From NCBI RefSeq assembly GCF_001194135.2, contig NC_068985.1, positions 57,084,866 through 57,148,789 of the forward strand: a DNA stretch of 63,924 nucleotides, given 5' to 3'. The DNA is from Octopus bimaculoides (Eukaryota). The notes beneath the pieces were generated by a model. The model saw only the letters and a program-made list of their open reading frames with translations, searched no databases and had not been told where the DNA came from. Of this stretch, positions 8,147-51,180 are shown in pieces; the stretch's first letter is position 1, and every line of letters begins with the position of its first letter. The translations under genes were made by a program, and so were the position numbers.

Positions 8147-8208
8147 ATTGAGTACGACGTTTCACGGTTAAGAGTATGAAGGTACTCTATTCCGATCTTC
8201 AGCCCAAT
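8147..8208 (-). ncRNA. Minimal type I hammerhead ribozyme (family A)
   Basis: Minus strand: stem I ATTGGG/CTCAAT, CTGAAGA, stem II CGG..AGAGTA/TACTCT..CCG, GAAA, near-palindromic ACGTCGT, GUA cleavage triplet (site 8153/8152). U.U at the base of stem II. Confidence 0.8.
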
Positions 8209-8551
8209 ATTCGAATAAATTTGAAAGTGTCTATACAACTCATGGGAATTTTGACCATGCGACATCAAAAACAATACNNNNNNNNNNNNNNNNNNNNNNN
8301 NNNNNNNNNNNNNNNNNNNNNNNNNNNNNNNNNNNNNNNNNNNNNNNNNNNNNNNNNNNNNNNNNNNNNNNNNNNNNNNNNNNNNNNNNNNNNNNNNNNN
8401 NNNNNNNNNNNNNNNNNNNNNNNNNNNNNNNNNNNNNNNNNNNNNNNNNNNNNNNNNNNNNNNNNNNNNNNNNNNNNNNNNNNNNNNNNNNNNNNNNNNN
8501 NNNNNNNNNNNNNNNNNNNNNNNNNNNNNNNNNNNNNNNNNNNNNNNNNNN

Positions 8552-8780
8552 ATACATTGTTATTTCTTCCTGTGCATGTGAATCTTGTATGTAACCCGGC
8601 TGTAAGGCCTTATTTCCATATACGCCACTTAATTTTATTTGTCCAGTCGAAAGTCATCTGTTGCTATGTCCCGTTATTATTCCAACTGTATTTGTGTAAC
8701 ATTGTTCGTTTTTTCACGTCCTTGTTTTTGCATACATTCGCTGCTTTCTCCCAAGGAATCTAATGCTTTTAGCGTATATA
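8552..8780 (+). mobile_element. Dispersed repeat family X fragment (probably Penelope pLTR-like)
   Basis: Shares gtaaggc...gtcgaaag...ccaaggaatctaatgct motifs with 59420-59600. Confidence 0.5.
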
Positions 8781-8989
8781 CTTGTAAGTTTACGAAGCGT
8801 GGGTGGTGGCAAGGCTGAAGCAGGTGAAAATAGAGAAAACAAGTTAAATGGTAAGGAAAAATATAAAGAAAATTATGTAAATGACAATAAGGAACTAAAC
8901 GGAAGATATATTGTTGGTTTAATGTATAGTGAGGGTAGATACGAGGGAAATTTAATGAAGCTTAGTGGGAAGGCGGGATGGGGTAGTTG

Positions 8990-9410
8990 TTGTTTGTATT
9001 TTGAGAATAGATTTAGTGATCGATGTTTGCATGTAAAAATTATACTGCTACGTTTCAAGACAATCCGTGGATCACAAAATAGCAAAGACCACAGCTATTC
9101 AGAGATCACGCTCGTTATAGCTGCTGTATGGATTGGCGTGGGTTACTATGGACCACTAGGGAGTGTAAGGAGTTGAATCAATCTTTCGTTTGTTGATAAG
9201 CTGAGATAACAATGTATTATTGGATTTTGTTTGGGAATTGAAACTGGAGTAGTGGTTGTTCACTCGAGCTTTTTCCTTCTTTCAATCCTTCTTTCTGTCT
9301 ACATTTATATTCTCCTCTCCTACCGAGCTCTCTACATATTCTGATTGAGTCTTCCATGTGTTAACATGTACCTCCTTGCTGCAATATAAGCTTTCATTTA
9401 ATCAAGATAT
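8990..9410 (-). pseudogene. Penelope-like element ORF C-terminus (GIY-YIG endonuclease and terminal Cys/His motif), decayed
   Basis: Minus strand translates ESLYCSKEVHVNTWKTQSEYVESSVG..KARVNNHYSSFNSQTKSNNTLLSQLINKRK..TPYTP*WSIVTHANPYSSYNERDL*IAVVFAIL, then (shift) CDPRIVLKRSSIIFTCKHRSLNLFSKYK. This follows the typical PLE GIY-YIG C-terminal pattern. Confidence 0.75.
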
Positions 9411-9502
9411 CCTTGGCCTGAAGAGTAGCCTGTGGTATACACCTAGCTTGGATATTTACCACTTCTGATGTTCCGCCCGCTATGAAACATATGTAGCCCG
9501 GG
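9411..9502 (+). ncRNA. Minimal type I hammerhead ribozyme (family B)
   Basis: Stem I CCTTGGC/GCCCGGG, CTGAAGA (9418-9424), stem II GTAGC/GCTAT extended by GTGGTA/TACCAC, GAAA (9484-9487), palindrome ACATATGT, GUA cleavage after 9495. Confidence 0.8.
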
Positions 9503-10003
9503 TCTTATCTACTCCATTCCTTAATCGCACACCCGACAATCATGGTCGCCTATCGTGAAATATAAAATGAACTTTTTTCGGTTTATCGTAATTCGATACG
9601 AAAAGAATCCACAACCTTCCGTTTCAATAAACCACCATTGTTATATTTATATCTTCTAGCTCTGAGGCTATTGGTCTAAGAAAACTTATTTGTATGTCTG
9701 CTTGCTGTAATACCTAAGTTCAATAAAATATAGTACATATGCTTTTAGTTTTACTATAACTTTCATTTAGTTACCTTGTGCTACACATAGGCCAAAGTCT
9801 ATGCGATGTTTGCTTAATTCATAGACTGAAATATTAGAGATTATAGATCAGACGTTTATATGCACCCATGATGCTATTCCAGAAGCAAACAGCTCTATAG
9901 TCGGCATGAAAGTTGACAGTCATTTCTTCTATATACGTTCAAACAATCCAAGTGAATAATTTGCAATATTCGTAGTAGTCTTGGCAGCCTTTTTCAACCC
10001 AGT

Positions 10004-10036
<33 letters not shown>

Positions 10037-10247
10037 NNNNNNNNNNNNNNNNNNNNNNNNNNNNNNNNNNNNNNNNNNNNNNNNNNNNNNNNNNNNNNTA
10101 TATATATTTATTTTCTCTTAGTTAACAATTAAGTCCGACAAAATAAATTGGTTAATAGATACCAGAGTATGAAAGATCACAAAATGACTGTAATGTAACT
10201 CCTGTTTGTGAGGTAGACACTCACTGTTATTTTGGGTATTTGAGTTA

Positions 10248-10475
10248 ATATAAAATTTAATAAATGGAATAATGCCCATATGTTAAATGAATTCTTTAAT
10301 TTCCGACATATGTTTCGAAGATTACAAATGGTGTCTTCCAAAGGAATGAGTGATGTTGATAAAGATGTAATCTTCTCTTCAGGGAAATACATAAGATCCA
10401 ACTTAACCGAAACATATGTCGGAAATAATAGAATTCATTTAACATGCGTATTACTCCATTTATTAAATTTTATAT
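10248..10475. repeat. Inverted repeat (10248-10317 vs 10408-10475) carrying a hammerhead and an inverted hammerhead 3' half
   Basis: The right arm cgaaacatatgtcggaaat...aaattttatat is the reverse complement of the left arm, with a few mismatches. Confidence 0.85.
10299..10388 (-). ncRNA. Intact minimal type I hammerhead ribozyme (family C)
   Basis: Minus strand: ATTTCC, CTGAAGA, GAAGATTACA..TGTAATCTTC (10-bp perfect stem II), GAAA, CATATG, TC, cut, GGAAAT. All core nucleotides are canonical, with a GUC site at 10305/10304. Confidence 0.92.
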
Positions 10476-10537
10476 ATATATATATGTATATTTATACACA
10501 CACACACGCGCGCGCGCGCGCACACACACAAACACAC

Positions 10538-13300: not shown

Positions 13301-13688
13301 TGTGGAGGCGCAATGGCCCAGTGCTTAGGGCAGCGGACTCGCAGTCATAGGATCGTGGTTTCGATTCTCAGACCGGGTGTTGTGACTGTTTATTGAGCGA
13401 AAACACCTAAAAGCTCCACGAGGCTCCGGCAGGAGAGGATGGCGAACCCTGCTGTACTCTTCCACCACAACTTTCTCTCACTCTTACTTCCTGTTTCTGT
13501 TGTGCCTGTAATTCAAAGGGTCAGCCTTGTCACACTGTGTCACGCTGAATATCCCCGAGAACTATGTTAAGGGTACACGTGTCTGTGGAGTGCTCAGCCA
13601 CTTGCACGTTAATTTCACGAGTAGGCTGTTCCGTTGATCGGATCAACTGGAACCCTCGACGTAGTAAGCGACGGAGTACCAACAACAA
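13301..13688 (+). mobile_element. Full-length tRNA-derived SINE family 2 with (CAA)n tail and TSD cttgttat
   Basis: A-box TGGCCCAGTGCTTAG and B-box GTTTCGATTC. Direct repeat cttgttat at 13292-13299 and 13689-13696. Highly similar to 31541-31920. Confidence 0.9.
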
Positions 13689-15025
13689 CTTGTTATATAT
13701 CCATATATATTGATTTTATTTACCGTACGCCAAATAGTCACTCTTTTTTTCTAGACGAAGCTATGAAGAATATTCTACAAATACCTTTAACTTTATAGAA
13801 ATCGCTGCGATTTTCCCCCAATTCACAAATTACCGTGTTAGGAAAATGAAGGACATTTCAAATACTGTATTCAAAGATATGTACGAAAGGACAATATGGT
13901 TCACTTCATCAATGAAAGCACATCAGTATTTCTATACAAGTTTCCTCTAACAGAATATAACGCGTTATACCACGCGACAGTAAATCGTGTAAATCTGTGA
14001 TCACAGCAGAAGCGAATTCAGTAAATCATTTTCTTTCTTGAAACCTTCATGCAGGAACTCTACATTGTGGTAGTTACGTACCTTTAATTGACATGGTTAA
14101 CTGTAATTTCATCAATACAGTGTACAGCATTATATTTTTTGTTCCTATGATTATGGATGTATGAGAACAAAGGAGGTTTTACAAAAACTCGCTTCCTATA
14201 AGAGTTATCAAGGCAATCTTCTCTTAAACTACACACTACTGCCAGAAAATAGGAAGGGAAAATATTAAATAACTGTACCCATCATTCAAAAGTGTATATG
14301 AATTTTGTGCTGTACTTTCGATAGTTGTTTTAGTTGCCTATGTAAGTGTAGACAATCTCGGCCCTTGAATAAGTGAAATGCAAGGATATGAGAGTAGGAA
14401 GGAGAGAGGGAGCGCGACTAGTTCTGACACTCATCTTCAGCTTATTATTGTGAAACGTAAAAACAAGTGATTCCACAATGGCACAGAACGCAGTCCACTC
14501 CTTGAAACGAATTCCTGACTTTATGGTCGTCGCTCGAAACCCTAAACAGTAATCTATATGCCTTCACATAATATACCATGTTGTAATTAAAGACAGATTT
14601 TTTAGAGTTAGTTTTCATAAGATTAAAAGTAGAAAGAAAAACGCATATGGCTTGTTGAAGCCTTACTCAGACTGGTGAAATAGACAAGCAGTTTCTTCAA
14701 GTCGAAATCGGTAGATATCTGTAAATGGATGCCAGCGTTGATAAGAAAGACACGGCAATCTCAAAACGCGGAATCTGTTCCTCATAGAGAGCAGGATTAT
14801 TCAGCTATGATTAGTAGAAGGTTCATGTCATTTATCTGACACTACCAAAGCAATATACATTGTTACGGATCCTTGTGTAGGACTATAAATACCACCATTA
14901 CAGAATCGATAGATTATACACTGGCTCAGTATTGGAGAAATGTAATCCTGTGCTATCTCCATCAAATCAGTTAGAATTGCATTTAAGTTAATAATAATAA
15001 TAATAATGATAGTAATAATAATAAC

Positions 15026-15101: not shown

Positions 15102-15370
15102 AGGCCGTGGCTCTCATGGCTTCTCATCTTAACTGATTGGAAGTGTTATCGTGTACGTTGTTTGTCATTTGCTAGTCAGTTGTTTGACAAGGGGTCCCAC
15201 CTGCAAGCTCATGTACTCTTTATCTTGATATAAGCTCACCATGTCGCGCAGTTATGGTTGAGATGCATGTGCCTGGTGTACACTTATCAGACTGGTAGTC
15301 ATGATGGGTATACTGGGCTTCGTATACTTTATACCAGTGTCACTTTGATGGCATGCTTTGCTCTCTTACC
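15102..15370 (+). mobile_element. Repeat family 3 (non-coding retroposon-like), internally deleted copy
   Basis: Matches 15445-15996 but jumps from gttgtttgac to ..cccacct. Flanked by (AAT)n and (AAC)n. Confidence 0.75.
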
Positions 15371-15381
15371 CAACAACAACC

Positions 15382-15444: not shown

Positions 15445-15996
15445 TGCATCATGCCTTGATGCAGTACCAGGCAATGGCTTTCATGTATTTTGATCTTAAC
15501 TGATTGGAAGTGTAAACATGTACATTGTTTTATCTTGGTATAAAAGATGGGCTACAACAAATATTCTGCTCAATACCACGATTTGCATGTCAGTTGTTTG
15601 CCTTTAACCAATTGAGCATGTCTCTTAGTGGCTGACGACATGTGCATCTCTGATCACGAGCAAAAGTAGTGGGGGTGCATCATAGCCATGCGTTGAGAGG
15701 AATTCTTTGGAGTTTGAATAATTCACCTCTGGAAACATGGGTGGTTTGTTCATCATCCTTAAACAAACTTTATTTAGGGACCTTTTGAGCAAGGTGAGCT
15801 ACTCAACCTGAAGAAAATCCTAACTGGGCCCCACCTGGTGGAAGATCATGCGCTGTTTATCTTGATATGAGATCACTATGCTGCGCACATATGGTTGCGA
15901 TGCGTGTGCCTGGTGTACCCTTATCAGACGGGTAGTCATTATGTGTACATTGGGCTTCGTATATTTTACCCCAGTGTCACTATGATGACATACGCT
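15445..15996 (+). mobile_element. Repeat family 3, long copy with (AAC)n tail
   Basis: Colinear with 24440-24897 and 15102-15370. Confidence 0.8.
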
Positions 15997-16049: not shown

Positions 16050-16721
16050 ATCCTTTATTAGCCACAAGGGTCGACAAAAATAAGAGTGGACATTTCAAAA
16101 CATCTAAGACAAAGTAGAGTTACGTAAAATGTCATGTAAAAAGTTGATAATGAAAAACATAACAAAGAAAATGCCTAAAAGAGGGAGGCTACACAGAGCT
16201 ACACATGGAGACCTCACGAAACATGTACAAGCTGCCCGACCACTAGGGCGAAAGCCCTCTCCCCATTTTTTTCTTTTTCTCTCAGTCTTGAAAACTCAAA
16301 AGCGCATGCTCAAAGTAGAGCCGTGGACACATACCATCTTCGCCATATTAACCCACATTTCAGCAAATTTGCGGGATGTCAGCGCTTCTTTCTCAACCTT
16401 AACTTTCCTTTTCAGATGGTATCTGAAAAAGTTGATGACGGGTAGGCCAAAGAGGAAAGTATCTGCGTTCAGCCCTTTCAGTCTAAACCACCACACAACC
16501 TCTTCCGCTTCAGCCACGAGATAGATGGAAATTGCCTCCCCTTGCCGGCCAAAGGAATGCGGCGGGGCAATCCCCATGATGGAATCAATCGACAAGCAGA
16601 CAGACACGCCCTATACGTGACAGCAGATGTTCGGAATAAACCAATATATCAGATATGCTCGGGCACTGGACGAGTGTGCGAAGAACGGTTTCGTCGCTTT
16701 GCGCACATCTCAGGCAGGTCC
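16050..16721 (-). mobile_element. L1-Tx1-clade LINE 3' end (zinc-knuckle ORF2 C-terminus, 3' UTR, AATAAA)
   Basis: Minus strand reads RCAQSDETVLRTLVQC..AEEVVWWFRLKGL..INFFRYHLKRKVKVEKEAL..FAEMWVNMAKM, then a UTR ending GCTAATAAAGGATTATT. Confidence 0.8.
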
Positions 16722-17615
16722 GACTCTTCTGATGTACTCTTTCTCAATTTTCGTTTTAATTTCTAAACTTGTTACCCTGTAATATTTTAATACTCCTTGA
16801 GACTTATAACTCTGTCTTCCTTTCAATGATTTTAATGCCTGACCATCTGGTAATTGGATGCCTTCGCTGTTGACTCCCTGTCCCCTTTTCAGGACTAATA
16901 TTGTACATCTATCTATGCCACATTCGATACGTATATCATAGCTGAAGAGTCTTACAGTCTGTATTAAGGAATTTGTTGGTGCCTTTTAATGCTGGCAATC
17001 TTTTTCTTACTTCTTTACTCTTTACTTCCTGCAACTCATCTAAAATCTTCTGACCTTCCTCACTTAAATCTCTTAAGTTGCTGATACCAGTTATCCCATC
17101 CTTATTGTTAGCGCTGTTGTTATTTGTCCTTTAGATTCTTCGTTGGTTTGAGCTATATCTCTTATGGAGTTGTTTGTCTTTCCTACTGCCTGGTCTTTCT
17201 TTTCCAGTTCTTTTGTGATCTCTTCTACCTCCAATTCTGTCATCCACTTTCTTCTAATAGCATTTGCTTGATCTACTAATCTCTGCTCAGTCACTTTATA
17301 TATAATCTTCTTTACCCAAAGTGTTATCATCCGTTTTCTATAGCCCATTCTGTTAGGTTTACTTGCTAAGTAGCACTGCATCACTATCTTATTTTCTTCG
17401 CTGGTCCACTCCCTCCTCGTTGCACTATTATCTGCTGATGCTCTATTAGGATAACAGCTGTGGTTAGTCTGCATCTTTACTGAACGACTGCCGAGCGAGA
17501 GGCCTTCTCTTAATGTCTCACCTTCATTTTCGCTGTTACAGTAAGAATTTCTTCGGAACCTCCTCTCTCTCATAAACTCAGATAAGGTAACGTTCGTCAC
17601 TATCTTCATCACCAC
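16722..17615 (-). mobile_element. R4/Dong-like RLE LINE: 5' part plus RT C-terminal piece, internally deleted
   Basis: WTSEENKIVMQCYLASKP..GYRKRM..VTEQRLVDQANAIRR (N-terminus) joins at ~16970 to LIQTVRLFSYDIRIECGIDRCTILVLKRG..GIQLPDG..KEYIRRV. Confidence 0.8.
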
Positions 17616-18835: not shown

Positions 18836-18863
18836 AATAATAATAATAATAATAATAATAATA

Positions 18864-18865
<2 letters not shown>

Positions 18866-18905
<40 letters not shown>

Positions 18906-31920: not shown

Positions 31921-34867
31921 TGTTCGACATACACATCGTAGGAAACCTATCTTTTGAAAATGATCGACATGTGCTTCAGCTAGAAACGGGAAGATATCCC
32001 AATATCGTTACTGGACCATTGTGAGGAAGAACTCAAAGAGATTTTCACGATGTGTATAAACTATTGACTAAGGTAGATTATATGTAAAAATGTGTCTAGA
32101 CTGTAAAAAAAACAAACAAAATAAAACAGTAAAAAATAGGCATCAAGATTAAGGGAGAGGTTGAAAGTTACTGAACTCCAGGAAAAGGGGGGAGGGAAGC
32201 ATTGTGAAAGGATATTACAAAAGGTAGAGCCTCCTTGCTCGACGAACACTTCGCATAAAAGAATACCATGTGCCTTACCATAGAATAGAACTTCGATTTA
32301 CAGAGACGAAATATACGGGTTACAAGCAAGGGCATTGACGCAGACGTTTGCGGCAAAATAGTGCAGGTAATAAATGGTGGGAGTCAGACTCAATAACTCA
32401 TCTGCCAGGAAATTTCTCTCTGATTACGCAATTCCTTTCCATGACGAATGATGATAAAGCTATCCGGGGGTAGTGGTTTTCTATTGTTAGAACATGTAGG
32501 AATATGAGCAACTTAAGAGTGTTCCACACTATGAAGGAGAGTAAGAACAGAAAGTATAGTCATCAATAGATATGTGCATACAACAGCAACTCCCAGCTAT
32601 CTGGAGACAAAAGCCTCAAACATTCATCAGAATGTAATGTTTTGGTTTTACATCTGCACCGACTTGGCTGATTCATTGCTTTGATAGTTTAATCTACTTG
32701 GTCATTTTAAGACTTCTTATAATCACCTCTAAGAGTGTCTATGCGTGAGTATGCGTATATTTATATATCATAATGAGCGTCAAACGCACACAATCATATT
32801 TCATGTATGTATGTATGTATTATTGTGTGTGTACGTGTGTGTATATGTCTGTATGTGTATATATATATGTATATACGAGCCCAAATATTTCACTGGCGGT
32901 GCCCCAGCATGGCCACAGCCTCAAGGCTGAAACATATAAAAGAATAAAAGAATATGTATTGTTTGACTTCACTCTGCACTCACATATTACCATATGTTCG
33001 GAAACCGTTTGTAACACTTATGAATATATTACCACATGTCGCAAATCAATGAAAAAATTATTATCATTATTAAAATTGTTATTATTGTTATTGTTCTTGT
33101 TGCTGTTGCTGCCGTAGCTGCTGCAGCAGCTGTTGTTGTTGTTATTATTGTTGTTGTTACTTAAGCGTGATTCCGGTACAGCTGTGTGACTAATTAGTAA
33201 GAAATATTTTTGAAAGCAAAACGTGAAAAATTATTTCGAAAAAAAAAAAGAAGATGAAAATAGATCTTAATCACCGCAAATTCAGTGACGTCATTAACCT
33301 ATATTTCTAATATTCAAGAATGTTTACAAAAGAAATGAATTAAAAACGAAGGTAAAAATTTCTTCGTGTCTTGAAGAAAATATGAATATTTTATTTTTAT
33401 TTTCCTTTTTTATTCATTGTTAACATTTTGTTCACAATCATTTAACAGTGTCGTTCTTCCTAATGACTTGGAAGTTTATAAATATTTAAGAAAGACATTT
33501 CAGATACAACTGACGATAATGATACAGCACCACACTTCGTTAGTATATGGTGGTTTTTCCCTCTCTGTAGCCACTGCGTTCTTATACCATATTATTCATA
33601 TTTCAATAGTATATGCGTTTCACTTTCATTTATCTGAAATCAATGGAAGGAAATCGATAAAAATGCATTACTTCACAAGAACAAAAGCATTATGATTTTT
33701 ACAATATATTATTTTATATTTAGTTTTACTTTCAATTGAAATCGAAAGAGAGAAACAGAGAGGGAGAGAGAGTGAGAGAAAGAGAGTGAGAGAGAGAGAG
33801 TGAGAGAGAGAGAGGGGGAGAGAATATGTGTTGGAATGGGGTGGGTGGTGATAGAGAGTTATACTACGGCTTTTTTTTTGTGTCTCAATATCTGTTAAAA
33901 GAATTTCAATAAACGCAGAAATTTCTTGCAGTGAAAACAAAATATCTGATTAAAATCATTGAATTTTGTGTATATTTTGCTACCAAAATTCGCAGATTTA
34001 CTATTTTCAATGTGTTTGTAAACGTAATGTACCAAACAGATGATTGACTTCGCTTTATTATTCTTTTGCTTGTAGTTACATCTAGATTAAAAGAATTTGA
34101 TGACAGTTCAGATATTTGATAATGCTGTATTATGTTTAATAAATAATCTATTTGAGAACCTAAATTATTTGAAATGCTAATTTCTTGTAGATCACATCTC
34201 TGAAATATGCAAATATTCTTTAATAAAGAACGTATAAAATATTAAGAGAAACAGTTATATTGCGCCATGTTTTTAAAATTCAGTAAGAAACATTATATTA
34301 AAAATATTTTCTCATAGAAGAAAATTATTTTACATATAAATGATTAATAATACTAATACCTCCTTCGTTAAATATTAGTTTAATTTTTCTGGCTGTCCGA
34401 TAGATTAATATTTTTACAATATATTTGAAATAAATACGTAGGCACACTGGCACATCTGTGTTTTATTTTAAATTGGTGAGTGTCTTTTAGGGACACGAAT
34501 GAGATTGGTTAAGTTTAATAAGTAATTAAATACATTTCATACTAAGTCTTTATGAGTGATTCTCAAATCCCAAACTGAATAAACCACCGTGGATGAAACG
34601 TTTAGATATGTGCCAACAATCTAAGCAAAATATTAAACACTGCGTCTGTAGTGAGTCTTTCATGCTATTTTTCTCATTTCTAGTTATTTAAAAATACCTA
34701 TCTTTTTCATTGACTGAATATATANNNNNNNNNNCATTAACTGTGTAGTAATGCCTCACGCTTCGAGGGACTAAATGAGTCAAATACTACCCAAAAATAA
34801 GCAACATATTCACTGAAAGCGAGGGAATGCAGCTTTCAAAATTTATCTCTTAAAAACATTTTACTTA

Positions 34868-34945
34868 ACGGTAAACCACTGGTTTCTCAATCAAATACAG
34901 AAAAACTGTGATGTAACCTGTATTCTTTTGTTCATCAGTACACGT
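34868..34945 (-). ncRNA. Type I hammerhead ribozyme (family D, left arm)
   Basis: ACG(T)GTA, CTGATGA, A CAA..GAATACAG/CTGTATTT..TTG A, GAAA, CCAGTGG, TT, cut, TACCGT. GUU site at 34874/34873. Confidence 0.75.
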
Positions 34946-35555
34946 ATGGTCAAGATACATAAAAATAAACAAGAATCAACATACCACGATGTAGCCACCA
35001 CAACACGATGACTTCTGTTCAGAATTATATATCCATGAAAGAGATTTGAATTTATCCGGTTGCACCTCAGTAACATGTTCTTATACAGAATAATATTCAG
35101 CACTGAATATATTCTAATTATTTATAATATAATATAGGATAAATTCTTTATAAGAATTTATCAAGTAGTCAGCGTGAAAAAACCTCATAATGGAAAAATT
35201 AATGAAAAAAATTTCATAATGAAAAAAATCCATCATTTTTTCATAAATATATATAAATCATTTATATAAAGGGCATTAACTGTATAGTAATGCCTCACGC
35301 TTCGAGGGACTAAATAAGTCAAAAACTACAAAAAAATTCATAAATTCTTATAAGGAATTTATCCTATATTATATTATAAATAATTAGAATATATTCAGTG
35401 CTGAGTATTATTCTGTATAAGCACATGTTACTGAGATGCAACCGGATAAATTCAAATCTCTTTCATGGATATATAATTATGAACAGAAGTCATCGTGCTG
35501 TGGTGGTTACATCGTGGTATGTTGATTCTTGTTTATTTTTATGTATTTCGACCAT

Positions 35556-35633
35556 ACGTGTACTGATGAACAAAAGAATGCAGATTACTTCACAGTTTTT
35601 CTGTATTTGACTGAGAAATCAGTGGTTTACCGT
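35556..35633 (+). ncRNA. Type I hammerhead ribozyme (family D, right arm)
   Basis: CTGATGA 35563-35569, GAAA 35615-35618, ATCAGTGGT, GUU site after 35627, stem I 3' strand TACCGT. Confidence 0.7.
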
Positions 35634-36537
35634 TAAGTAAAATGTTTTTAAGAGATAAATTTTGAAAGCTGCATTCCCTCACTTTCAGTGAATATGTTGC
35701 TTATTTTTTGGTAGTTTTTTACTTATTTAGTCCCTCGAAGCGTGAGGCATTACTACACAGTTAATGCCCTTTATATAAATGATTTATTTATATTTATGAA
35801 AAAATGAATTTTTTTCATTATNNNNNNNNNNNNNNNNNNNNNNNNNNNNNNNNNNNNNNNNNNNNNNNNNNNNNNNNNNNNNNNNNNNNNNNNNNNNNNN
35901 NNNNNNNNNNNNNNNNNNNNNNNNNNNNNNNNNNNNNNNNNNNNNNNNNNNNNNNNNNNNNNNNNNNNNNNNNNNNNNNNNNNNNNNNNNNNNNNNNNNN
36001 NNNNNNNNNNNNNNNNNNNNNNNNNNNNNNNNNNNNNNNNNNNNNNNNNNNNNNNNNNNNNNNNNNNNNNNNNNNNNNNNNNNNNNNNNNNNNNNNNNNN
36101 NNNNNNNNNNNNNNNNNNNNNNNNNNNNNNNNNNNNNNNNNNNNNNNNNNNNNNNNNNNNNNNNNNNNNNNNNNNNNNNNNNNNNNNNNNNNNNNNNNNN
36201 NNNNNNNNNNNNNNNNNNNNNNNNNNNNNNNNNNNNNNNNNNNNNNNNNNNNNNNNNNNNNNNNNNNNNNNNNNNNNNNNNNNNNNNNNNNNNNNNNNNN
36301 NNNNNNNNNNNNNNNNNNNNNNNNNNNNNNNNNNNNNNNNNNNNNNNNNNNNNNNNNNNNNNNNNNNNNNNNNNNNNNNNNNNNNNNNNNNNNNNNNNNN
36401 NNNNNNNNNNNNNNNNNNNNNNNNNNNNNNNNNNNNNNNNNNNNNNNNNNNNNNNNNNNNNNNNNNNNNNNNNNNNNNNNNNNNNNNNNNNNNNNNNNNN
36501 NNNNNNNNNNNNNNNNNNNNNNNNNNNNNNNNNNNNN

Positions 36538-39580: not shown

Positions 39581-39583
39581 CCA

Positions 39584-41768: not shown

Positions 41769-41820
41769 ATGCGGGATACGTTTGGAAGGTAGTGTGAGAA
41801 AAAGTGGACTGATAAACAGA

Positions 41821-42180
41821 GGACTGAGAAAAAATTTTGTACTGAAATTGAAACCGGTTAAGTGTTCGGTGTATTTAAAAAAAAATATAAATGGTATATA
41901 AAGTATATAATACAGTTCGAGAAGCTTCACTTTCCACGGCCGTTTCTAGACCTCATGTCCTAGTAGAAAAATTAATAAATCTGACAAAAGGATTTTAAAA
42001 TTGTTCTACCAGAAAATGAGCACCAGAAACGGCCGTTGAAAGGGAACATCCTCGAACTGTATTATATACGTTATATACCATTTATATTTAAAAAAAAAAA
42101 ACACACCGAATTCTATCGATCTTTTAATTGAAACTCTTAACCGCTCTTAATTTCAGTACAAAAAAATTTTCTTCAGTTCT
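41821..42180. repeat. Long hairpin / MITE-like palindrome with a 7-nt loop
   Basis: 41821-41982 pairs with 41990-42180 (about 30 nt extra in the right arm). Loop gacaaaa at 41983-41989. Confidence 0.85.
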
Positions 42181-43023: not shown

Positions 43024-43105
43024 TGATCTATGAGCATTTCGATGCAATATCCCGACTCAATCCTGTATGTTATAAAATATGGAATATTGCATTTCCTCAG
43101 GGTCA
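43024..43105 (-). ncRNA. Type I hammerhead ribozyme (family E, left arm)
   Basis: TGACC, CTGAGGA, A ATGCAATATTCC/GGGATATTGCAT C (12-bp stem II), GAAA, TGCTCA, TA, cut, GATCA. AUA site at 43029/43028. Confidence 0.75.
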
Positions 43106-43140
43106 GATTTGATTAATTCATAGCAGACAGTAAAAAACTT

Positions 43141-43345
43141 AAATACAAAAATAAGGTGTATTCTTTAGAATGGTCAATTATAGGAAAACAGCTTCCTTAT
43201 GACAAGGGCAAAGATTTTTATTCCCTCTGTAATTTGGAATTGTATTTCATACTTTTTTCTAAGGGTGACCTAGTTAACAAAATCGCATATAGAGCTTTCA
43301 GATGTCTACATATGAATAAACATACGTTTTTATTTTATTAATCTA
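43141..43345 (+). pseudogene. Penelope-like ORF extreme C-terminus
   Basis: YSLEWSIIGKQLPYDKGKDFYSLCNLELYFILFSKGDLVNKIAYRAFRCLHMNKH matches the post-GIY-YIG pattern WSI..PY....C.LC..E.YFIL....LLN......C.H.NK. Confidence 0.7.
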
Positions 43346-44695
43346 ATTTGGAGAGGTTAGTTAACTACATACCTTGATATTACTTTAATTTGGTTTAGCT
43401 TTAACTACATACCGGGATGTTATATTAAATTTGTTTAGCTTTAATTTAATATAACCTTTTCATATTTGTACAATGGTAAGTTTGGTTCCTATTTTATTAA
43501 AATTCCCCTTATAATTCTTTCTATAGATGACATCGAAATTTTGTTTGACTGCTTGCTTCATCGTTTTAATCAATTCATTTATTTAATCTTATTACTAAGT
43601 TAATGTATAATTAAGATTTCGATGGTTGCTATTTGAGAGTAACCTAATTTAGTTTTACTTTGTAATTTATAATTTATAATCTCTTATTTATCTTGATTAC
43701 ATATCCTTTATTGCTCTCTAAAATATTGAAATTTTAAAAATCAATATAACAATTTGATAGGATTAATAACATTGACTGATTAATTTAGATTCTAAAAATA
43801 TATATTATTTTGCCAGATTTACCTCTCTTTGACCATGGAGGAAAAACAATTCTTTTATGTTAATTTTAAATTTATTTTTATTATAATATATTGCAGATAA
43901 CATTTTTTAAGTGAGTTGGGTTTTTGTTCTCAAGTATCTAATAAATTATTTGATATAATGGTGTCGTTTTCAGCTACCTACTTTACATCATAATAGTTAC
44001 TTAATTTTTAATTTATATTTATATGTGAGATAGTAACGATTATATCGTAATATTTGATTACTTTTTGCGTTATCGATTAAATCCTTCCTTCTTTTGATAT
44101 TATTTTTAATATTATATTTGAACCCCATTACTACGTTAATTTATTATAATTTTTCTTAAACTTTGATAGCTGCAATGTGAATGTAACCTAATTTATTTTA
44201 CTTGTTATTATTCATTATTTACAATTGATATTCTCTAATTTATCTTGTTTACATAACCATAAAAAGTCTCATTACTGATCTAAACTTTAAATGAAATATA
44301 ATTATTTGATATGATTATGTACATTTGAGTAGATTATATTTTACATAGGTATTATTTACTAGATTTACCTCTCTTTGACCATTAACTTACAAAAATATTT
44401 TTTTAAATAATATATAGCAGTTTATTTTCTTTCATCGTTTTATTTACTTTCAAAAGTCCAACGGTTTTTATTGAAATTTACATCGTCCCTTACTCGTTCG
44501 CTACTTAACATCCTAGGTTAATATCCTAACTTAACAACACTACTTACTTACTTTACTATGTAACGGTTTTCTTAACCGATATTGTATGTAGTGGCAATAT
44601 GTTTCATGTCATTTCAACCTGTTTATACACATGTAATTTAAGGACAACTATTAATGTTGTCTGTTTTTTACTGTCTGCTATCAATTAATCAAATC

Positions 44696-44765
44696 TGACC
44701 CTGAGGAGATACAATATTCCATATTTTATAACATACAAGAGTGAGTCAGGATATTGCATATGAGA
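44696..44765 (+). ncRNA. Degenerate hammerhead (family E, right arm)
   Basis: CTGAGGA 44701-44707 and stem II are retained. GAAA is mutated to GAGA and stem III is lost. Confidence 0.55.
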
Positions 44766-44831
44766 ATTTTGCTACGTTGATAATAGGCACAATATTGTTA
44801 CCGAATTTTTGGTAGAGATCTATAAATACAA

Positions 44832-44917
<86 letters not shown>

Positions 44918-45120
44918 TAAATTTACATTTGTAAATCTCCCAACGAGAGACGTTCAATAACAGTACTCTAGAGTAAGGATTATTTACCAATATAACGTGG
45001 CAGTCGAATGTGAGGGTAATTTAGCCACAGGAAACATCGTTTCTCGCTGGCTATTCGACACATCTGTGTCCTTATATTTTCGATCAAGTGAGTTTAGCAT
45101 CCCCACTCAACACAAAACAA

Positions 45121-45169
45121 TATCTGTGTATCGTGATTTCGGATTATTTCCCTTCATCAGCTAAGAATA
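45121..45169 (-). ncRNA. Hammerhead family F, copy 1
   Basis: CTGATGA AGGGAAATAATCC GAAA TCACGATA CACAGATA. Stem I 5' strand partly mutated. Confidence 0.65.
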
Positions 45170-45435
45170 ACTTTTTCGTTAGAGGTGGGACTGCTGAATT
45201 CTTGTTCGAAATACATAGTTGCTGATCTAATTAATTGGTAAGTTTGTATTTGTAAATCTCTAAACGATAGACAGCCAGTAACAATACTCTAGAGTAGAGA
45301 TTATTTGCCAACACGACGTCGCAGTCGAATGCTACTGTTACTTAGTCCAAGGAGTCATCGTCTCAAGCTGGCTATACGCCACACTACCTATATTTTCGAA
45401 CAAGGGAGTTTAGCATCCCCACTTAGGACGAAACA

Positions 45436-45486
45436 ATATCTGTGCATCATGATATCTGAGTTATTTCCCTTCATCAGCATAGAATA
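45436..45486 (-). ncRNA. Hammerhead family F, copy 2 (core mutated)
   Basis: TATTCTATG CTGATGA AGGGAAATAACTCA GATA TCATGATG CACAGATA. GAAA is mutated to GATA and the triplet is ATG. Confidence 0.55.
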
Positions 45487-45702
45487 ACTGTTCGGCTAGC
45501 GATAGCGCTGCTAAATTCTTGTTCGAAATATATAGTTTTCAAAGGGGGGTTAGCATCTGTACTCAGTACTAATCAATATCTGTGTATCGCGATTTCTGGG
45601 TTAGATCAGCGTTAGATTGCTGGGTTAGATCAGTGACTGTGTGTCACTTTGAAAACTATATTTCGAACAAGAATGTGATTGCCCCACCTTTAGCCGAACA
45701 GG

Positions 45703-45751
45703 TATTCTGTGCTGATGAAGGGAGATACCCCAGAAATCGCGATAGACAGAT
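45703..45751 (+). ncRNA. Hammerhead family F, inverted copy
   Basis: TATTCTGTG CTGATGA (45712-45718) A GGG AGATA CCC A GAAA (45732-45735), palindrome ATCGCGAT, A, cut after 45743, GACAGATA. Confidence 0.75.
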
Positions 45752-45903
45752 ATTGTTTTGTGATGATTGGGAATGCTAAACTCCCTTGTTCGAAATTATA
45801 AGGACACAGATAGTTTGTCATATAACCGATTGGAGACGATGTTTCCTGTGGCTAAATAACAGTAACTTTCAACTGCCACGAATATTTGGCAAATAGTCTT
45901 TAC

Positions 45904-46034
45904 CATACATACATACATACATACATACATACATACAAACATACATACATACATACATACATACATACATACATACATACATACATGCATACATACATAC
46001 ATACATACATACGTACATACATACATACATACAT
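45904..46034. repeat. (TACA)n microsatellite
   Basis: Tetranucleotide run. Confidence 0.95.
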
Positions 46035-47559: not shown

Positions 47560-47755
47560 TTGTCTCTGCTTCACAACTTGTGCTGGTGTGCTTACGAGCC
47601 CGTTATTAAGCGCTTCCGCAAAAGAAAACTGTCCAATGAAGACCAGGTTTTCCAAAAAGTAAGTACTACTGTCGATTTGATCGATGAAACCTTCAAGTCG
47701 ATTTTCTATCAAGATCCCAGTCCAGTGGCTGGAACAAATAAAAGATAAAAGAAGA
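47560..47755 (+). mobile_element. Degenerate SINE 3' part
   Basis: Resembles 59850-60066 (gtactactgtcgatttg..ctggaacaaataaaagataaaag). Confidence 0.5.
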
Positions 47756-50069
47756 TATATTTGCCTGTAAAATGGATAAAATTTCTTTACTCCTTTTGGT
47801 GAGAGCTCGAAAGAAATATGTTAGTGAAAACCATGACAAATGTCTTAGAAATGCTTTGTCGTCATAGAAACCTCTCTGAATTCGTTCTGTCTATATCACT
47901 GTAAGAATTTCGAAAATTTAAAATTTCAAATATCAGTCATTGAATTATTGTTTCTCAGGTGAGGAAATACGATGTACTATTCATGCAGTGTTAATTATAT
48001 TATTTAGAAATTACATTGAGATAACCCGTATGGTTTAAGGTCACTGTAACCTTTACTTTTGAGTAGTTAGTAACATTTTCTGACATTGGAATGATGTTAG
48101 AGATTATAAAATTGGAATGAAATAAATCGATTCTTCAATATCATTAATAGTATGGACGTATTTTTCTGATTTAGATTCAGAAACTGAAGTGCTAGAATAT
48201 TATATTGCAAAGCAGTTTGATCGGAACCTTAGTTTGATATCATTTGCCTCATTAATGAAGGGTCGTTCAATCTACCGAAACCAGTCAAAATTGCCCTCAA
48301 ACTACAGCCGCACTGCTAACTATTTCTTATTTCATTAAAGATTTTAACACAGAAATCTGGAAAGTAACCAACTACTATAGAATAATTTCAGGGCGGCACC
48401 AACATTCCTGCCAGAAAATTGTCCTAACAAAACATTAATTATGTAATGGATGAAATATGTATGAATTGTGCAGTTAACTAAATTACTTGCATTATTCCAC
48501 ATACACTTGATATTTGTTCCAGCTTCTATGCACTTTAGTAATGCTGCCCAATGCAATTAAAATTAGCTAACTAACATGTCCAGCTCCAGCGATTAAATGG
48601 ATCTCAGATACATGTAATGTAGTATATACCCTACATATTGATTTCTTCATTTAATGTGAAATTATGATTCATTTCCATTCAGAAGGATTCTTACATGACA
48701 TCATTTTTAATATTTCTTGATATAGACTTAGATATACTAGTTAGCGTCTAGAAGAAATGGCATTCAATTAAGAAGTGAATCATACTCATTGAGAATATGT
48801 AACAACAGTCACGTAATCGAGTTGAAGAATTTCTTGTTCTCTTCATTCAATAATAAAACAGTGCCTGCCAAATACCATATGGCTATGATATAATATAATT
48901 CTATAACGCATAAAGTTATTCGAATCGGTGAGTGTACGTTTCATGTGAGGATATCAGCTAGCTTTCTCTGATAATTTGTACTAAATTGTGCCGAGTTCTA
49001 TAAAATGTCATGTTTGCATTCCATCTACAAGTGTGTGTATATATATATATATATATATNNNNNNNNNNNNNNNNNNNNNNNNNNNNNNNNNNNNNNNNNN
49101 NNNNNNNNNNNNNNNNNNNNNNNNNNNNNNNNNNNNNNNNNNNNNNNNNNNNNNNNNNNNNNNNNNNNNNNNNNNNNNNNNNNNNNNNNNNNNNNNNNNN
49201 NNNNNNNNNNNNNNNNNNNNNNNNNNNNNNNNNNNNNNNNNNNNNNNNNNNNNNNNNNNNNNNNNNNNNNNNNNNNNNNNNNNNNNNNNNNNNNNNNNNN
49301 NNNNNNNNNNNNNNNNNNNNNNNNNNNNNNNNNNNNNNNNNNNNNNNNNNNNNNNNNNNNNNNNNNNNNNNNNNNNNNNNNNNNNNNNNNNNNNNNNNNN
49401 NNNNNNNNNNNNNNNNNNNNNNNNNNNNNNNNNNNNNNNNNNNNNNNNNNNNNNNNNNNNNNNNNNNNNNNNNNNNNNNNNNNNNNNNNNNNNNNNNNNN
49501 NNNNNNNNNNNNNNNNNNNNNNNNNNNNNNNNNNNNNNNNNNNNNNNNNNNNNNNNNNNNNNNNNNNNNNNNNNNNNNNNNNNNNNNNNNNNNNNNNNNN
49601 NNNNNNNNNNNNNNNNNNNNNNNNNNNNNNNNNNNNNNNNNNNNNNNNNNNNNNNNNNNNNNNNNNNNNNNNNNNNNNNNNNNNNNNNNNNNNNNNNNNN
49701 NNNNNNNNNNNNNNNNNNNNNNNNNNNNNNNNNNNNNNNNNNNNNNNNNNNNNNNNNNNNNNNNNNNNNNNNNNNNNNNNNNNNNNNNNNNNNNNNNNNN
49801 NNNNNNNNNNNNNNNNNNNNNNNNNNNNNNNNNNNNNNNNNNNNNNNNNNNNNNNNNNNNNNNNNNNATATATATACACATATATATATTTATGTATATA
49901 TATATATATAGCTTTTGGGAAAAGAACCAAGGTTCATGAACTCATCGATGAAAATCCAATGAACTGATCGCTGAAAATTCAATGTCACATATAGAAAAAT
50001 TAATTAGTAAAAGCACAATAAATAATTATAATATAATACAAAGTAAATATCATAAGATAACGAAAATAA

Positions 50070-50182
50070 CACCACTACACGTGTTTCATAACAAAATTTT
50101 CAAATAGGAAAAAATATTTAAATCGATTAAAACTATGGAAAATCAATTCTATTCAAAAATATAGCTAATCCTCAGGTCAAAA
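50070..50182 (-). ncRNA. Type I hammerhead (family G), weak stem I
   Basis: TTTTGAC CTGAGGA (50175-50169), stem II TAGC/GTTA extended by ATTTTTGAATAG/CTATTTGAAAAT, GAAA (50087-50084), perfect palindrome ACACGTGT, GUA site at 50076/50075. Confidence 0.6.
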
Positions 50183-51180
50183 TACAACAATAATAATAAT
50201 AAAATTATGTATATATCAACCGACAATGAATAACAAATGAATGTATATAAAATACGTATTATATTAAGATAGAAAAATATTATTAAAAACATCAAAATTA
50301 TAAACGTTCCATAATTAATTTTACGTTTATTATAATATAAACTAACAGGAATAGTATATGCAAACACTAATTTTAACGAATCTTTCGTTTAAAATACAAT
50401 TTAAACGAAGTTTTAGGATAAATTAATAACGATATAAGTAACACTTATCTAAACGCTGCTATAGTTTAAACTAAAATATTTTAGACTAAAACGTTTATAA
50501 GAAAGAAGTCTCGTTAAAATATTGCGTAAAGAGAAAGAATGGAATAAATAGATATAAAAACATGAATGAAAATTCTATTATGAATGGAAGGTTATACTTT
50601 ATATAACTTAAATCATAATAAAACAATTAGCTATAATGTATAATCAAAGAAATTAAATAAAATGACTACTTATTTATCCCATAAAACAAAAAGAAATATT
50701 AGACAGTATTAATGGAAAAAATTCAGCCCTAATCTAATCGAAGTCTTGTACTATCAGTTTATTGTTAAAAAATGTATCGACTAAAATTATCACAAAAAAT
50801 CATTTGAATTAATATAAAAGTACATATTTTTTTCAAACAATGATATAAAGTTATTTTAGTTTAAACTATAGCAGCGTTTAGATAAGTGTTACTTCTATCT
50901 TTATTATTTTAACCTAAAACTTCGTTTAAATTGTATTTTAAACGAAAGATTCGTTAAAATTAGTTTCTGCTTATAATATTCCTGTTAGCTTATATTATAA
51001 TAAACGTAAAGTTAATTATGGAACGTTTATAATTTTGCTATTTTTAAAAATATCTTTCTATCTTAATATAATTATAATAAGTATTTTATATACATTCATT
51101 TGTTATTTATTGTTGGTTGATATATACATAATTTTATTATTATTATTGATGTATTTTGACCTGAAGATTAGCTATATTTT
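50070..51180. mobile_element. Fold-back element with ~320-bp inverted arms (50156-50480 vs 50851-51180) and outward-facing hammerheads
   Basis: The arms are reverse complements, and the ORF track shows near-identical peptides at 50149-50367(-) and 51035-51280(+). Confidence 0.88.

What the first reader, a model, noticed from the sequence alone, without database searches (positions are those of the whole stretch)
8147..51180. Hidden system: at least seven unrelated hammerhead-ribozyme families, mostly as outward-facing pairs in fold-back elements
Seen: complete or near-complete minimal type I hammerhead folds at 8147(-), 9411(+), 10299(-), 34868(-)/35556(+), 43024(-)/44696(+), 45121-45751 (four copies) and 50070(-)/51161(+, 5' half). 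Each full fold has a palindromic or near-palindromic stem III (ACGTCGT, ACATATGT, ACCAGTGGT, ATGCTCAT, ATCGCGAT, ACACGTGT). In five inverted-repeat structures (C, D, E, F, G) the ribozyme copies point away from the centre. Established: Penelope-like elements carry minimal hammerheads with palindromic loop 3 that cleave as dimers, and their terminal repeats can be inverted. Inference: this genome holds a diverse, largely non-autonomous Penelope/retrozyme ribozyme population that is usually annotated only as unknown repeats or MITEs. It could cut host pre-mRNAs or make self-processed RNAs. I know of no description for octopus but cannot check the literature.
Basis: partly seen in the sequence, partly recalled or inferred. 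Interest (0 to 1): 0.92.

Follow-up and report, generated by a model that had tools for sequence, protein, structure and literature searches.

The report
Dimeric hammerhead ribozymes in retroelement fragments
Six short repeat families in this 64-kb stretch carry real-looking self-cutting hammerhead RNA motifs, but these are of the kind already known from Penelope-like retrotransposons and retrozymes, so this is a new example of a known class and not a hidden new system.

Summary
The observation largely holds. Six of the seven motif families (A 8147-8208-, B 9411-9502+, B2 10299-10388-, C 34868-34945-/35556-33+, F 45123-45750, G-left 50070-50181-) have the full type I hammerhead layout: CUGANGA, GAAA, A15.1-U16.1, H17, three helices and a palindromic helix III. 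Chance does not explain this. A relaxed descriptor finds 6 hits against 0.08 per shuffled window. Of 540 scrambled-core decoys run on the real sequence, only the true core stands out. None of 107 metagenomic matches to the bare core of B/B2 has the stems. Family D is rejected because its 3' half lies in a target-site-duplication-like flank outside the inverted repeat. G is weak, and F1-F3 and C-right are decayed.

The elements have no ORFs. They sit in short tandem units (F 321 nt, C about 536 nt) and in head-to-head inverted copies. Their 3' ends abut microsatellites. This is the published anatomy of Penelope-like elements and non-LTR retrozymes, which are abundant in cephalopods.

Rfam models miss all of them, perhaps because helix II is long (inserts of 32-81 nt in five of six families) and helix III is minimal. 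No cleavage, transcription or genome-wide covariation could be tested. I rate it a new member of a known kind, of moderate interest.

The parts
8147..8208 (-). Hammerhead A. Stem I ATTGGG/CTCAAT (6 pairs, one G.U). Core CTGAAGA. Helix II: U.U, then CGG/CCG, an internal loop and AGAGTA/TACTCT (32-nt insert). GAA. Helix III ACGTCGT. H17 = A at 8153.
   Evidence: The minimum-free-energy fold reproduces stems I and II.
9411..9502 (+). Hammerhead B. Stem I GGC/GCC plus three further pairs after a mismatch. Core CTGAAGA. Helix II GTAGC/GCTAT (G.U at 10.1-11.1) with a 59-nt insert. GAA. Helix III ACATATGT (perfect palindrome). H17 = A at 9495.
10299..10388 (-). Hammerhead B2, the best copy. Stem I ATTTCC/GGAAAT. 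Core CTGAAGA. Helix II GAAGATTACA/TGTAATCTTC (10 bp, G10.1-C11.1, 59-nt insert). GAA. Helix III ACATATGT. Cleavage triplet GUC, C17 at 10305.
   Evidence: The predicted dimer forms an 8-bp intermolecular helix III, with ddG -10.2 kcal/mol.
10407..10475 (+). B2', an inverted 5'-truncated copy. It starts inside the ribozyme at GAAACATATGTC|GGAAAT and ends at a (TA)n run. With B2 it forms the 10248-10475 fold-back.
34735..35164 (-). C left copy, an arm of a 430-nt inverted repeat (95% identical). The hammerhead is at 34868-34945. Stem I GTA/TAC, a bulge, then ACG/CGT. Core CTGATGA. Helix II: A.A, 3 bp, a 2x2 loop, then 8 bp (45-nt insert). Helix III ACCAGTGGT. H17 = U at 34874. The 3' tail is cut by gap 34725-34734.
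35216..35337 (-). C tail-only copy. It matches the 3' tail (35703-35821) of the right copy. It lies 51 nt upstream, on the minus strand, of the left copy, giving a partial tandem with a unit of about 536 nt.
35337..35821 (+). C right copy. The hammerhead is at 35556-35633, H17 at 35627. Compared with the left copy, two stem changes keep pairing as G.U and one makes A.C in helix II. It ends at gap 35822.
44905..45225 (-). F1, a 321-nt unit. The hammerhead is at 45123-45166 (CTGATGA A GGG..UCC GAA ATCACGAT A); stem I is damaged. Its 3' end abuts (TA)n.
45226..45545 (-). F2, a tandem unit directly upstream of F1. The hammerhead relic is at 45439-45483; GAAA has become GATA and position 17 is G, so it is dead.
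45538..45650 (-). F3, a partial unit. Only the 3' half of the ribozyme is left, at 45579-45613 (GAAATCGCGATACACAGA).
45640..45910 (+). F4, an inverted copy. The hammerhead is at 45706-45750 (TCTGTG CTGATGA A GGG AGATAC CCC A GAA ATCGCGAT A GACAGA). There is a G.G at 2.1-1.1, and H17 is at 45744. Its 3' end abuts (ATAC)n. The family consensus folds into a rod of about 150 nt with the ribozyme at its tip.
   Evidence: (38 bits with my own model).
50070..50181 (-). G-left, a weak hammerhead. Core CTGAGGA. Helix II: U.U then TAGC/GTTA (81-nt insert). GAA. Helix III ACACGTGT. H17 = A at 50076. Stem I has only 4 pairs with one defect. By my hand count, the bases next to the core match B at 19 of 24 positions.
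50156..51180 (.). G inverted repeat (arms 50156-50478 and 50852-51180, 92% identical). Only the 5' half of the ribozyme (51155-51180, +) lies in the right arm. After it comes a 22-bp hairpin around a (CT)n(TA)n run.
43024..43107 (-). D, rejected as a ribozyme. CTGAGGA and a long hairpin lie inside the terminal inverted repeat (43042-43138 / 44663-44759). The GAAATGCTCAT half lies in the flank, which recurs as a direct repeat (43030-43041 ATGAGCATTTCG / 44760-44771 ATGAGAATTTTG).
   Evidence: It fails both descriptors.
7927..8063 (-). A tail of about 139 nt downstream of A. It recurs, 91% identical and in the same orientation, downstream of G-right (51396-51534, +). Both copies end in (TA)n(ATAC)n.

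Best explanation
The window holds copies of at least six sequence-unrelated families of short, non-coding retroelement pieces. Each carries a type I hammerhead ribozyme of the dimer-dependent class found in the terminal repeats of Penelope-like elements (PLEs) and in animal non-LTR retrozymes.

Shown here:
- The full catalytic core, three helices and a palindromic helix III are present in six families, far above chance.
- The copies have no ORFs.
- They are arranged as short tandem units (F 321 nt, C about 536 nt) and as head-to-head inverted, 5'-truncated copies.
- Their 3' ends abut microsatellites.
- No reverse transcriptase or GIY-YIG endonuclease is encoded in the window.

Inferred from the published families:
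- Sense transcripts that run through tandem units carry two ribozymes.
- The ribozymes pair through helix III into a double hammerhead. Each cuts 3' of H17 and leaves a 2',3'-cyclic phosphate and a 5'-OH.
- This releases unit-length RNA, which may be circularised and is copied and inserted in trans by a PLE reverse transcriptase/endonuclease encoded elsewhere.
- The outward-facing pairs are most simply explained by priming of reverse transcription on both cut DNA strands at one target. This puts both 3' ends next to the flanks and the truncated 5' ends in the middle.
- Ribozymes of an inverted pair are on opposite strands and cannot act together on one transcript.

Most copies here are old (76-95% identity between copies) and several are inactivated.
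For: - Motif statistics.
- Across the five best families, 85.5% of stem cells pair, against 25-46% when the partners are slid by 1-3 columns. Eight of 11 pairs change on both sides.
- The families share no sequence beyond the core.
- Minimum-free-energy folds of A and B2 give stems I and II. The B2 dimer forms the intermolecular helix III.
- Tandem and inverted layout.
- No YxDD or GIY-YIG motif in six frames.
- By the automatic test, 4 of 6 homology-defined 3' ends lie within 15 nt of a microsatellite, against 8.6% of the window. A fifth does so by eye.
- Published anatomy of PLE hammerheads and PLE insertions: PMC4209133, PMC8557442, PMC6765202.
- Retrozymes, and a natural U.U at the base of helix II: PMC7229834.
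- The PLE enzyme cleaves and extends both DNA strands: PMC11167929.
- Penelope elements are abundant and recently active in octopus: PMC13282606, PMC8967140.
Against: - No Rfam hammerhead model matches any copy, even at E<=10 on 0.75-2.4 kb sub-regions.
- Only B2 has the canonical G10.1-C11.1 pair. B has G.U, A and G have U.U, and C and F have A.A.
- Helix II inserts of 32-81 nt are longer than in the published PLE minimal hammerheads.
- No PLE coding sequence is in the window, so the link to PLEs rests on architecture alone.
- The covariation count is partly circular, because the sequences were selected by a pairing descriptor.
- No other copies of any family could be fetched, so within-family covariation is untested.
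- The published PLE ribozymes cleave poorly in vitro, and cleavage was not needed for insertion in the one reconstituted system.
- No expression or cleavage data are available.
Confidence: 0.75

Rival explanations
1. All copies are simply 5'-truncated or terminal-repeat-only debris of full-length autonomous Penelope-like elements, dead on arrival. They are not a separate non-autonomous retrozyme population, and the ribozyme has no role of its own in these pieces.
For: - B2, B2', A, B and G are short solo or truncated pieces.
- PLEs typically form partial tandems and inverted 5'-truncated copies.
- Octopus genomes hold many Penelope families.
- Many copies here are mutated.
Against: - F1 and F2 are complete 321-nt units that abut directly with no ORF between them.
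- The F consensus folds into a rod with the ribozyme at its tip. That is retrozyme anatomy.
- A 2026 preprint argues that retrozymes are PLE derivatives anyway, so the two readings overlap.
Confidence: 0.25
2. The inverted-repeat structures are DNA-level fold-back or MITE-type transposons, and the hammerhead-like strings in them are incidental.
For: - D is exactly this: 97-nt terminal inverted repeats, a 12-nt direct-repeat flank, and half of its 'ribozyme' in the flank.
- The window has other fold-backs without any hammerhead core, at 18784-18948, 39579-39962 and 41883-42089.
Against: - A and B are not in inverted repeats.
- F and C also contain tandem copies.
- The true core is a lone outlier among 540 decoy cores on the same real sequence.
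- Arms end at microsatellites with the ribozyme always reading towards the end, which fits retroelement 3' ends.
Confidence: 0.08
3. The motifs are chance matches in AT-rich, repeat-rich DNA, picked out by eye.
For: - The core is short. 22 CTGANGA...GAAA combinations occur in the window.
- Shuffles give 0.42 core-plus-palindrome loci per window.
- D, 363(-), 37128(+) and 41803(+) are such chance matches.
- Rfam finds nothing.
Against: - 6 hits observed against 0.08 expected. With a palindromic helix III it is 5 against 0.007.
- The decoy-core test singles out the true core.
- None of 107 metagenomic core-only matches has the stems.
Confidence: 0.03

Closest known systems
Minimal, dimer-dependent type I hammerheads in the terminal repeats of Penelope-like elements (Cervera & de la Pena 2014, PMC4209133; Lunse et al. 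2017, not held, cited from PMC6765202)
   Same: - Type I topology.
- Very short palindromic helix III that can only form fully between two copies.
- Long helix II and short helix I.
- Many sequence-unrelated families within one genome.
- Copies in tandem and inverted arrays.
- Unpaired base after A9 in A, C and F.
   Different: - No RT/EN ORF is attached in this window.
- Helix II carries inserts of 32-81 nt in five of six families.
- G10.1-C11.1 is present only in B2.
- Where there is an unpaired base after A9, there is also one before G12 (U.U or A.A).
Animal non-LTR retrozymes (Cervera & de la Pena 2020, PMC7229834)
   Same: - Non-coding, low-GC (0.27-0.39) short units, each with one type I hammerhead.
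- Tandem copies (F 321 nt x about 2.3; C about 536 nt x about 1.2).
- Rod-like self-complementarity around the ribozyme (F).
- The axolotl HHR_Amex2 has the same U.U at the base of helix II as A and G.
   Different: - Arrays here are very short and mixed with inverted copies.
- A and B are solitary.
- No loop 1-loop 2 tertiary contacts are recognisable.
- Circular RNA was not tested.
Newt/salamander satellite 2 and Schistosoma Sm-alpha hammerheads; Rfam Hammerhead_1 (RF00163)
   Same: Type I, a weak palindromic helix III, active as dimers, carried by repetitive DNA.
   Different: Those have a compact helix II (about 4 bp) and are recognised by Rfam. None of the copies here reaches even E<=10.
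L1 twin priming, and PLE cleavage and extension of both target strands (PMC11167929)
   Same: It would give head-to-head copies with the 3' ends outward and truncated 5' ends at the centre, as seen for B2, C, F3/F4 and G.
   Different: This is an analogy for how the fold-backs arose. It was not tested here.

Membership tests
Hammerhead ribozyme, type I | Catalytic core C3-U4-G5-A6-N7-G8-A9, G12-A13-A14, A15.1-U16.1, and H17 not G | tested here: met
   Exact in A, B, B2, C-left, C-right, F1, F4 and G-left. Lost in F2 and F3.
Hammerhead ribozyme, type I | Three helices around the core, with helix I open and helices II and III closed | tested here: met
   Descriptor hits. 85.5% of stem cells pair across five families. 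Stems I and II appear in the minimum-free-energy folds of A and B2.
Hammerhead ribozyme, type I | G10.1-C11.1 pair at the base of helix II | tested here: inconclusive
   G-C in B2, G.U in B, U.U in A and G, A.A in C and F. A natural U.U is documented in axolotl.
Hammerhead ribozyme, type I | Match to an Rfam hammerhead covariance model at its gathering score | tested here: not met
   No hammerhead hit at the gathering score or at E<=10, on the whole window or on sub-regions.
Hammerhead ribozyme, type I | Site-specific self-cleavage | not testable with these tools
   Needs in vitro transcription or mapping of RNA ends.
PLE-associated minimal/dimeric hammerhead | Helix III of 1-3 bp with a palindromic sequence that allows an intermolecular helix | tested here: met
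   ACGTCGT, ACATATGT (twice), ACCAGTGGT, ATCGCGAT, ACACGTGT. The B2 cofold forms the 8-bp intermolecular helix.
PLE-associated minimal/dimeric hammerhead | Extra nucleotide between A9 and 10.1, long helix II, short helix I | tested here: inconclusive
   Helix II is long in A, B, B2, C and G. The unpaired base after A9 in A, C and F is matched by one before G12. It is absent in B and B2.
PLE-associated minimal/dimeric hammerhead | Located in the terminal repeat of an element that encodes RT plus a GIY-YIG endonuclease | tested here: not met
   No YxDD or GIY-YIG motif in any frame of the window. No long ORF next to any copy. The copies are therefore non-autonomous or fragments.
PLE-associated minimal/dimeric hammerhead | Partial tandems plus an inverted 5'-truncated copy; insertion at microsatellites; assembly breaks | tested here: met
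   C is flanked by gaps on both sides. Published description.
Non-LTR retrozyme | Tandem non-coding units of a few hundred nt, each with one type I hammerhead | tested here: met
   Met for F (321-nt units F1, F2 and partial F3) and partly for C. Not met for A and B, which are solitary.
Non-LTR retrozyme | Expressed as unit-length circular RNA | not testable with these tools
   No transcript data.
TIR DNA transposon / MITE (for D only) | Terminal inverted repeats flanked by a direct target-site duplication | tested here: met
   97-nt arms, 94% identical. 12-nt flanks match at 10 of 12 positions.

The most novel reading that the evidence does not exclude
The source genome (said to be an octopus; not verified) carries a very large, uncatalogued population of dimer-dependent hammerheads that standard tools cannot see. 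They have unusually long helix II inserts (32-81 nt) and non-canonical 10.1-11.1 pairs, and they fall into many sequence-unrelated families. At about one family per 10 kb in this window, this could mean tens to hundreds of thousands of copies genome-wide. That is my own rough scaling from a single window and an assumed gigabase-scale genome. Some families might still be active retrozymes that yield abundant self-processed or circular RNAs in cephalopod tissues.
Probability: 0.3. Interest if true: 0.55.

Novelty: new member of a known kind. Interest (0 to 1): 0.35.

Why it matters
It shows that ribozyme-bearing retroelement fragments can be common in a genome and still be missed completely by Rfam-based annotation, so they end up labelled as unknown repeats or MITEs. 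If the density seen here holds genome-wide, cephalopod repeat catalogues would gain a class marker for Penelope-derived non-autonomous elements. The 2026 O. vulgaris annotation, for example, mentions no ribozymes. The long-helix-II variants would also extend the descriptors used to find hammerheads. It does not change what is known about how these ribozymes or elements work.

Tried and rejected
- Rfam cmscan on the whole window, at gathering score and at E<=10, and on sub-regions 8100-10480 and 45050-45800. No hammerhead model matched. The hits were microsatellite- or hairpin-driven miRNA and snoRNA false positives.
- My own covariance model, built from five trimmed ribozymes. It recovers F4 (38 bits), F2, A and F1. 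It handles the long helix II inserts poorly: B, B2 and C score only 9-16 bits. Its extra hit at 41803-41843 has A at the essential G8, and 37128-37185 has no helix II. Both are rejected.
- Metagenome scan for family C (GTGTACTGATGAACAAAAGAAT): no matches. No other copies of any family could be obtained, so within-family covariation was not testable.
- Metagenome scan for the B/B2 core pattern: 109 stretches found, and none of the 107 matches analysed has the stems. It served only as a null.
- Protein search with a retroelement-like ORF (17094-17624-) to identify the organism. It gave four unnamed ENA proteins. The one contig fetched (L001) shares only 66 nt at 83% with the window, so it is a different organism.
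- GAAA-palindrome sites at 41946(-)/42026(+) (ACGGCCGT) and 42588(+) (ACGATCGT) have no CUGANGA and G at position 17. They lie inside other fold-backs and are not ribozymes.
- The 363(-) descriptor hit is non-palindromic and lies beside a Pogo-like transposase remnant. It is treated as the expected chance hit.
- D is rejected, as explained above.
- A possible homology between the sequence after the microsatellite in G-right (GAATCGTCAG...CTCAATTAG) and the 3' half of A (GAAACGTCGTACTCAATTAAC) was considered. It is too short to judge.

Full report

The quoted helix III strings are all in the sequence.

Rfam gives no help. No hammerhead model matches at the gathering score or at E<=10, either on the whole window or on sub-regions of 0.75-2.4 kb. 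The Rfam hits are microsatellite- and hairpin-driven false positives.

I therefore wrote an explicit type I descriptor. It requires stem I, CUGANGA, helix II with an insert of up to 110 nt, GAA, A15.1...U16.1, H17 not G, and the return strand of stem I.

- The strict form finds A (8202-), B (9418+) and B2 (10382-). In 300 dinucleotide shuffles the mean is 0.16 hits per window, 0.017 with a palindromic helix III, and 0 of 300 at the stringency reached by B and B2.
- Allowing one defect in stem I adds C-left and F4. That gives 6 hits against 0.08 expected, and 5 palindromic hits against 0.007.
- Shuffling destroys real repeat structure, so I also ran 540 permutations of the core letters on the unshuffled window. 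The true core gives 6 hits (5 palindromic). 510 of the 539 decoys give none, and no decoy gives more than one palindromic hit.
- All six loci that have both core strands and a palindromic helix III also have both stems. Shuffles give 0.42 core-only loci per window, and 0.0125 at G-left's stem quality.
- As an outside null, none of 107 metagenomic matches to the bare pattern CTGAAGAG-N50-66-GAAACATATGT has the stems. Both window matches (B and B2) do.

The motif is therefore really enriched.

**2. Copy by copy**

- **B2** is textbook: stem I of 6 bp, helix II of 10 bp with G10.1-C11.1, helix III ACAUAUGU, and a GUC cleavage triplet.
- **A** has U.U at the base of helix II. A natural precedent exists in axolotl HHR_Amex2.
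- **B** has G.U at that position.
- **C and F** have A.A at that position.
- **Minimum-free-energy folds** of A and B2 reproduce stems I and II.
- **Dimer prediction:** the B2 dimer forms an 8-bp intermolecular helix III and swapped stems I, with ddG -10.2 kcal/mol.
- **G-left** has the whole layout but only four stem I pairs. G-right keeps only the 5' half.
- **F2, F3, F1 and C-right** carry inactivating or weakening changes.
- **D is rejected.** CTGAGGA and a hairpin lie inside a 97-nt terminal inverted repeat. GAAATGCTCAT lies in the flank, and that flank recurs as a direct repeat on the far side (ATGAGCATTTCG / ATGAGAATTTTG, 10 of 12 matches). D is an element of about 1.7 kb with terminal inverted repeats and a target-site-duplication-like flank, and its 'ribozyme' is an accident.

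**3. Relatedness of the families**

Apart from the two G arms, no pair of families shows sequence similarity beyond the core (z<4). Even so, 85.5% of stem cells pair, against 25-46% when the partners are slid by 1-3 columns. Eight of 11 pairs change on both sides. This count is partly circular, because the sequences were chosen by a pairing descriptor. The shuffle and decoy tests are the independent evidence. B, B2 and G share bases next to the core and may be distant relatives.

**4. Surroundings**

- **Coding capacity:** there is no ORF of note beside any copy. No YxDD or GIY-YIG motif occurs in any frame of the window.
- **Layout from self-BLAST**:
  - B2 (-) and a 5'-truncated B2' (+) sit head to head, at most 18 nt apart.
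  - C has a minus-strand tail-only copy, 51 nt of spacer and then a full copy. This is a partial tandem with a unit of about 536 nt. A plus-strand copy lies head to head with it, with arms 95% identical.
  - F has two complete 321-nt minus-strand units in direct tandem, a partial third unit, and an inverted plus-strand copy.
  - G is a 329-nt inverted repeat.
- **Orientation:** in every pair the ribozymes read outward.
- **3' ends:** four of six ends defined by homology lie within 15 nt of a microsatellite, against 8.6% of the window. A fifth does so by eye. By my own binomial arithmetic this is about 1 in 1000.
- **Rod structure:** the F consensus folds into a rod of about 150 nt with the ribozyme at its tip.
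- **Assembly gaps:** no motif or inverted repeat contains a gap, and the arms are 76-95% identical, so they are not assembly artefacts. C is bounded by gaps on both sides, and the spacing of the A-B-B2 cluster crosses two gaps.

**5. What it is**

This anatomy is the published one for Penelope-like elements and their non-autonomous relatives.

- PLE terminal repeats carry type I hammerheads with a minimal palindromic helix III, a long helix II and a short helix I. They occur in many variable families per genome and act as dimers.
- PLE insertions form partial tandems with an adjacent inverted 5'-truncated copy. They favour microsatellites and break short-read assemblies.
- Animal non-LTR retrozymes are short tandem non-coding units, each with one type I hammerhead. 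They have recently been argued to derive from PLE terminal repeats.
- Penelope elements are abundant in cephalopods and recently active in octopus.
- 235 Rfam Hammerhead_1 hits were reported for the giant squid.

**6. How it most likely works (inferred, not shown here)**

- Transcripts through tandem units carry two ribozymes. These pair through helix III, and each cuts 3' of H17. This releases unit-length RNA with 5'-OH and 2',3'-cyclic phosphate ends.
- That RNA may be circularised. It is copied and inserted by a PLE enzyme supplied in trans.
- The reconstituted anole PLE enzyme cleaves and extends both target strands. Priming on both strands would give exactly the head-to-head, 3'-ends-out, 5'-truncated pairs seen here.
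- The two ribozymes of such a pair are on opposite strands and cannot cooperate on one transcript. Read-through across a pair would instead make a long hairpin.
- Cleavage was dispensable for insertion in vitro in that system, so the ribozyme's role remains open even for the known families.

**7. Novelty**

This is a new member of a known kind. Three things are mildly unusual:

- helix II inserts of 32-81 nt in five of six families;
- non-canonical 10.1-11.1 pairs in most families;
- complete invisibility to Rfam.

I found no paper in the held library that describes hammerheads in octopus repeats. The 2026 O. vulgaris repeat annotation mentions no ribozymes. I could not verify that the window is from an octopus. 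The detection is sound and useful for annotation, but a specialist would not be surprised.

Noticed in passing
window 7927-8063 (-) and 51396-51534 (+): A segment of about 139 nt, 91% identical, lies downstream of hammerhead A and downstream of the G-right half-ribozyme. It has the same orientation relative to the ribozyme in both places, starts at the same base (ATTTGTAGTTTGG) and ends in (TA)n(ATAC)n. It could be a shared 3' module, or a separate small element that these insertions target.
   Followed up: partly
window 43030-44771: Element D is about 1.7 kb. It has 97-nt terminal inverted repeats (94% identical), a 12-nt direct-repeat flank (10 of 12 matches) and no ORF. It looks like a non-autonomous DNA transposon. 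The outer 51 nt of each repeat form a hairpin of their own.
   Followed up: partly
window 51181-51310 (+): Right after the G-right arm, a 22-bp inverted repeat (ATTACTAATTGACGATTCCCTG / CAGGGAATCCTCAATTAGTAAT, 21 of 22 matches) encloses a (CT)n(TA)n microsatellite.
   Followed up: no
window 454-1383 (-): Remnant of a Pogo/Tigger-type DNA transposase: Pfam DDE_1 (E 1.3e-7), HTH_Tnp_Tc5 (E 3.9e-4, just below the cutoff) and BrkDBD (E 2.2e-6) on three consecutive ORF pieces. The chance hammerhead-like hit at 363(-) lies just beside it.
   Followed up: partly
window about 61461-61560 (+): The DNA reads ...CATGACAACGCGCCCGCTCAT..., which translates to HDNARPH. From memory this is the signature of mariner transposases, so a mariner-like remnant probably lies here (sequence seen).
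   Followed up: no
window 18784-18948, 39579-39962, 41883-42089: Three further fold-back (palindromic) elements, with arms 93%, 78.5% and 81% identical, and no hammerhead core. The first encloses an (AAT)n/(ATT)n run. The window is generally rich in inverted-repeat elements.
   Followed up: partly
window 13302-13689 vs 31543-31920 (inverted, 91%); 15539-15991 vs 24425-24878 (direct, 85%); 15192-15373 vs 24716-24897: Other dispersed repeat families, of unknown type, each with two or three copies in the window.
   Followed up: no
window 16299-17624 (-), 20256-20558 (-), 29008-29238 (-), 62920-63922 (+): ORF fragments that look by eye like pieces of non-LTR retrotransposon proteins. None has a Pfam match at E<=0.01. 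The 177-aa piece finds only four unnamed ENA metagenome proteins.
   Followed up: partly
whole window: There are 19 assembly gaps (10-992 N) in 64 kb, and several directly abut microsatellites or repeat arms (for example 34725-34734, 35822-36537, 10037-10098). There are 39 (TA)n runs of at least 10 nt, and 8.6% of bases lie within 15 nt of a 2-4-mer microsatellite.
   Followed up: yes
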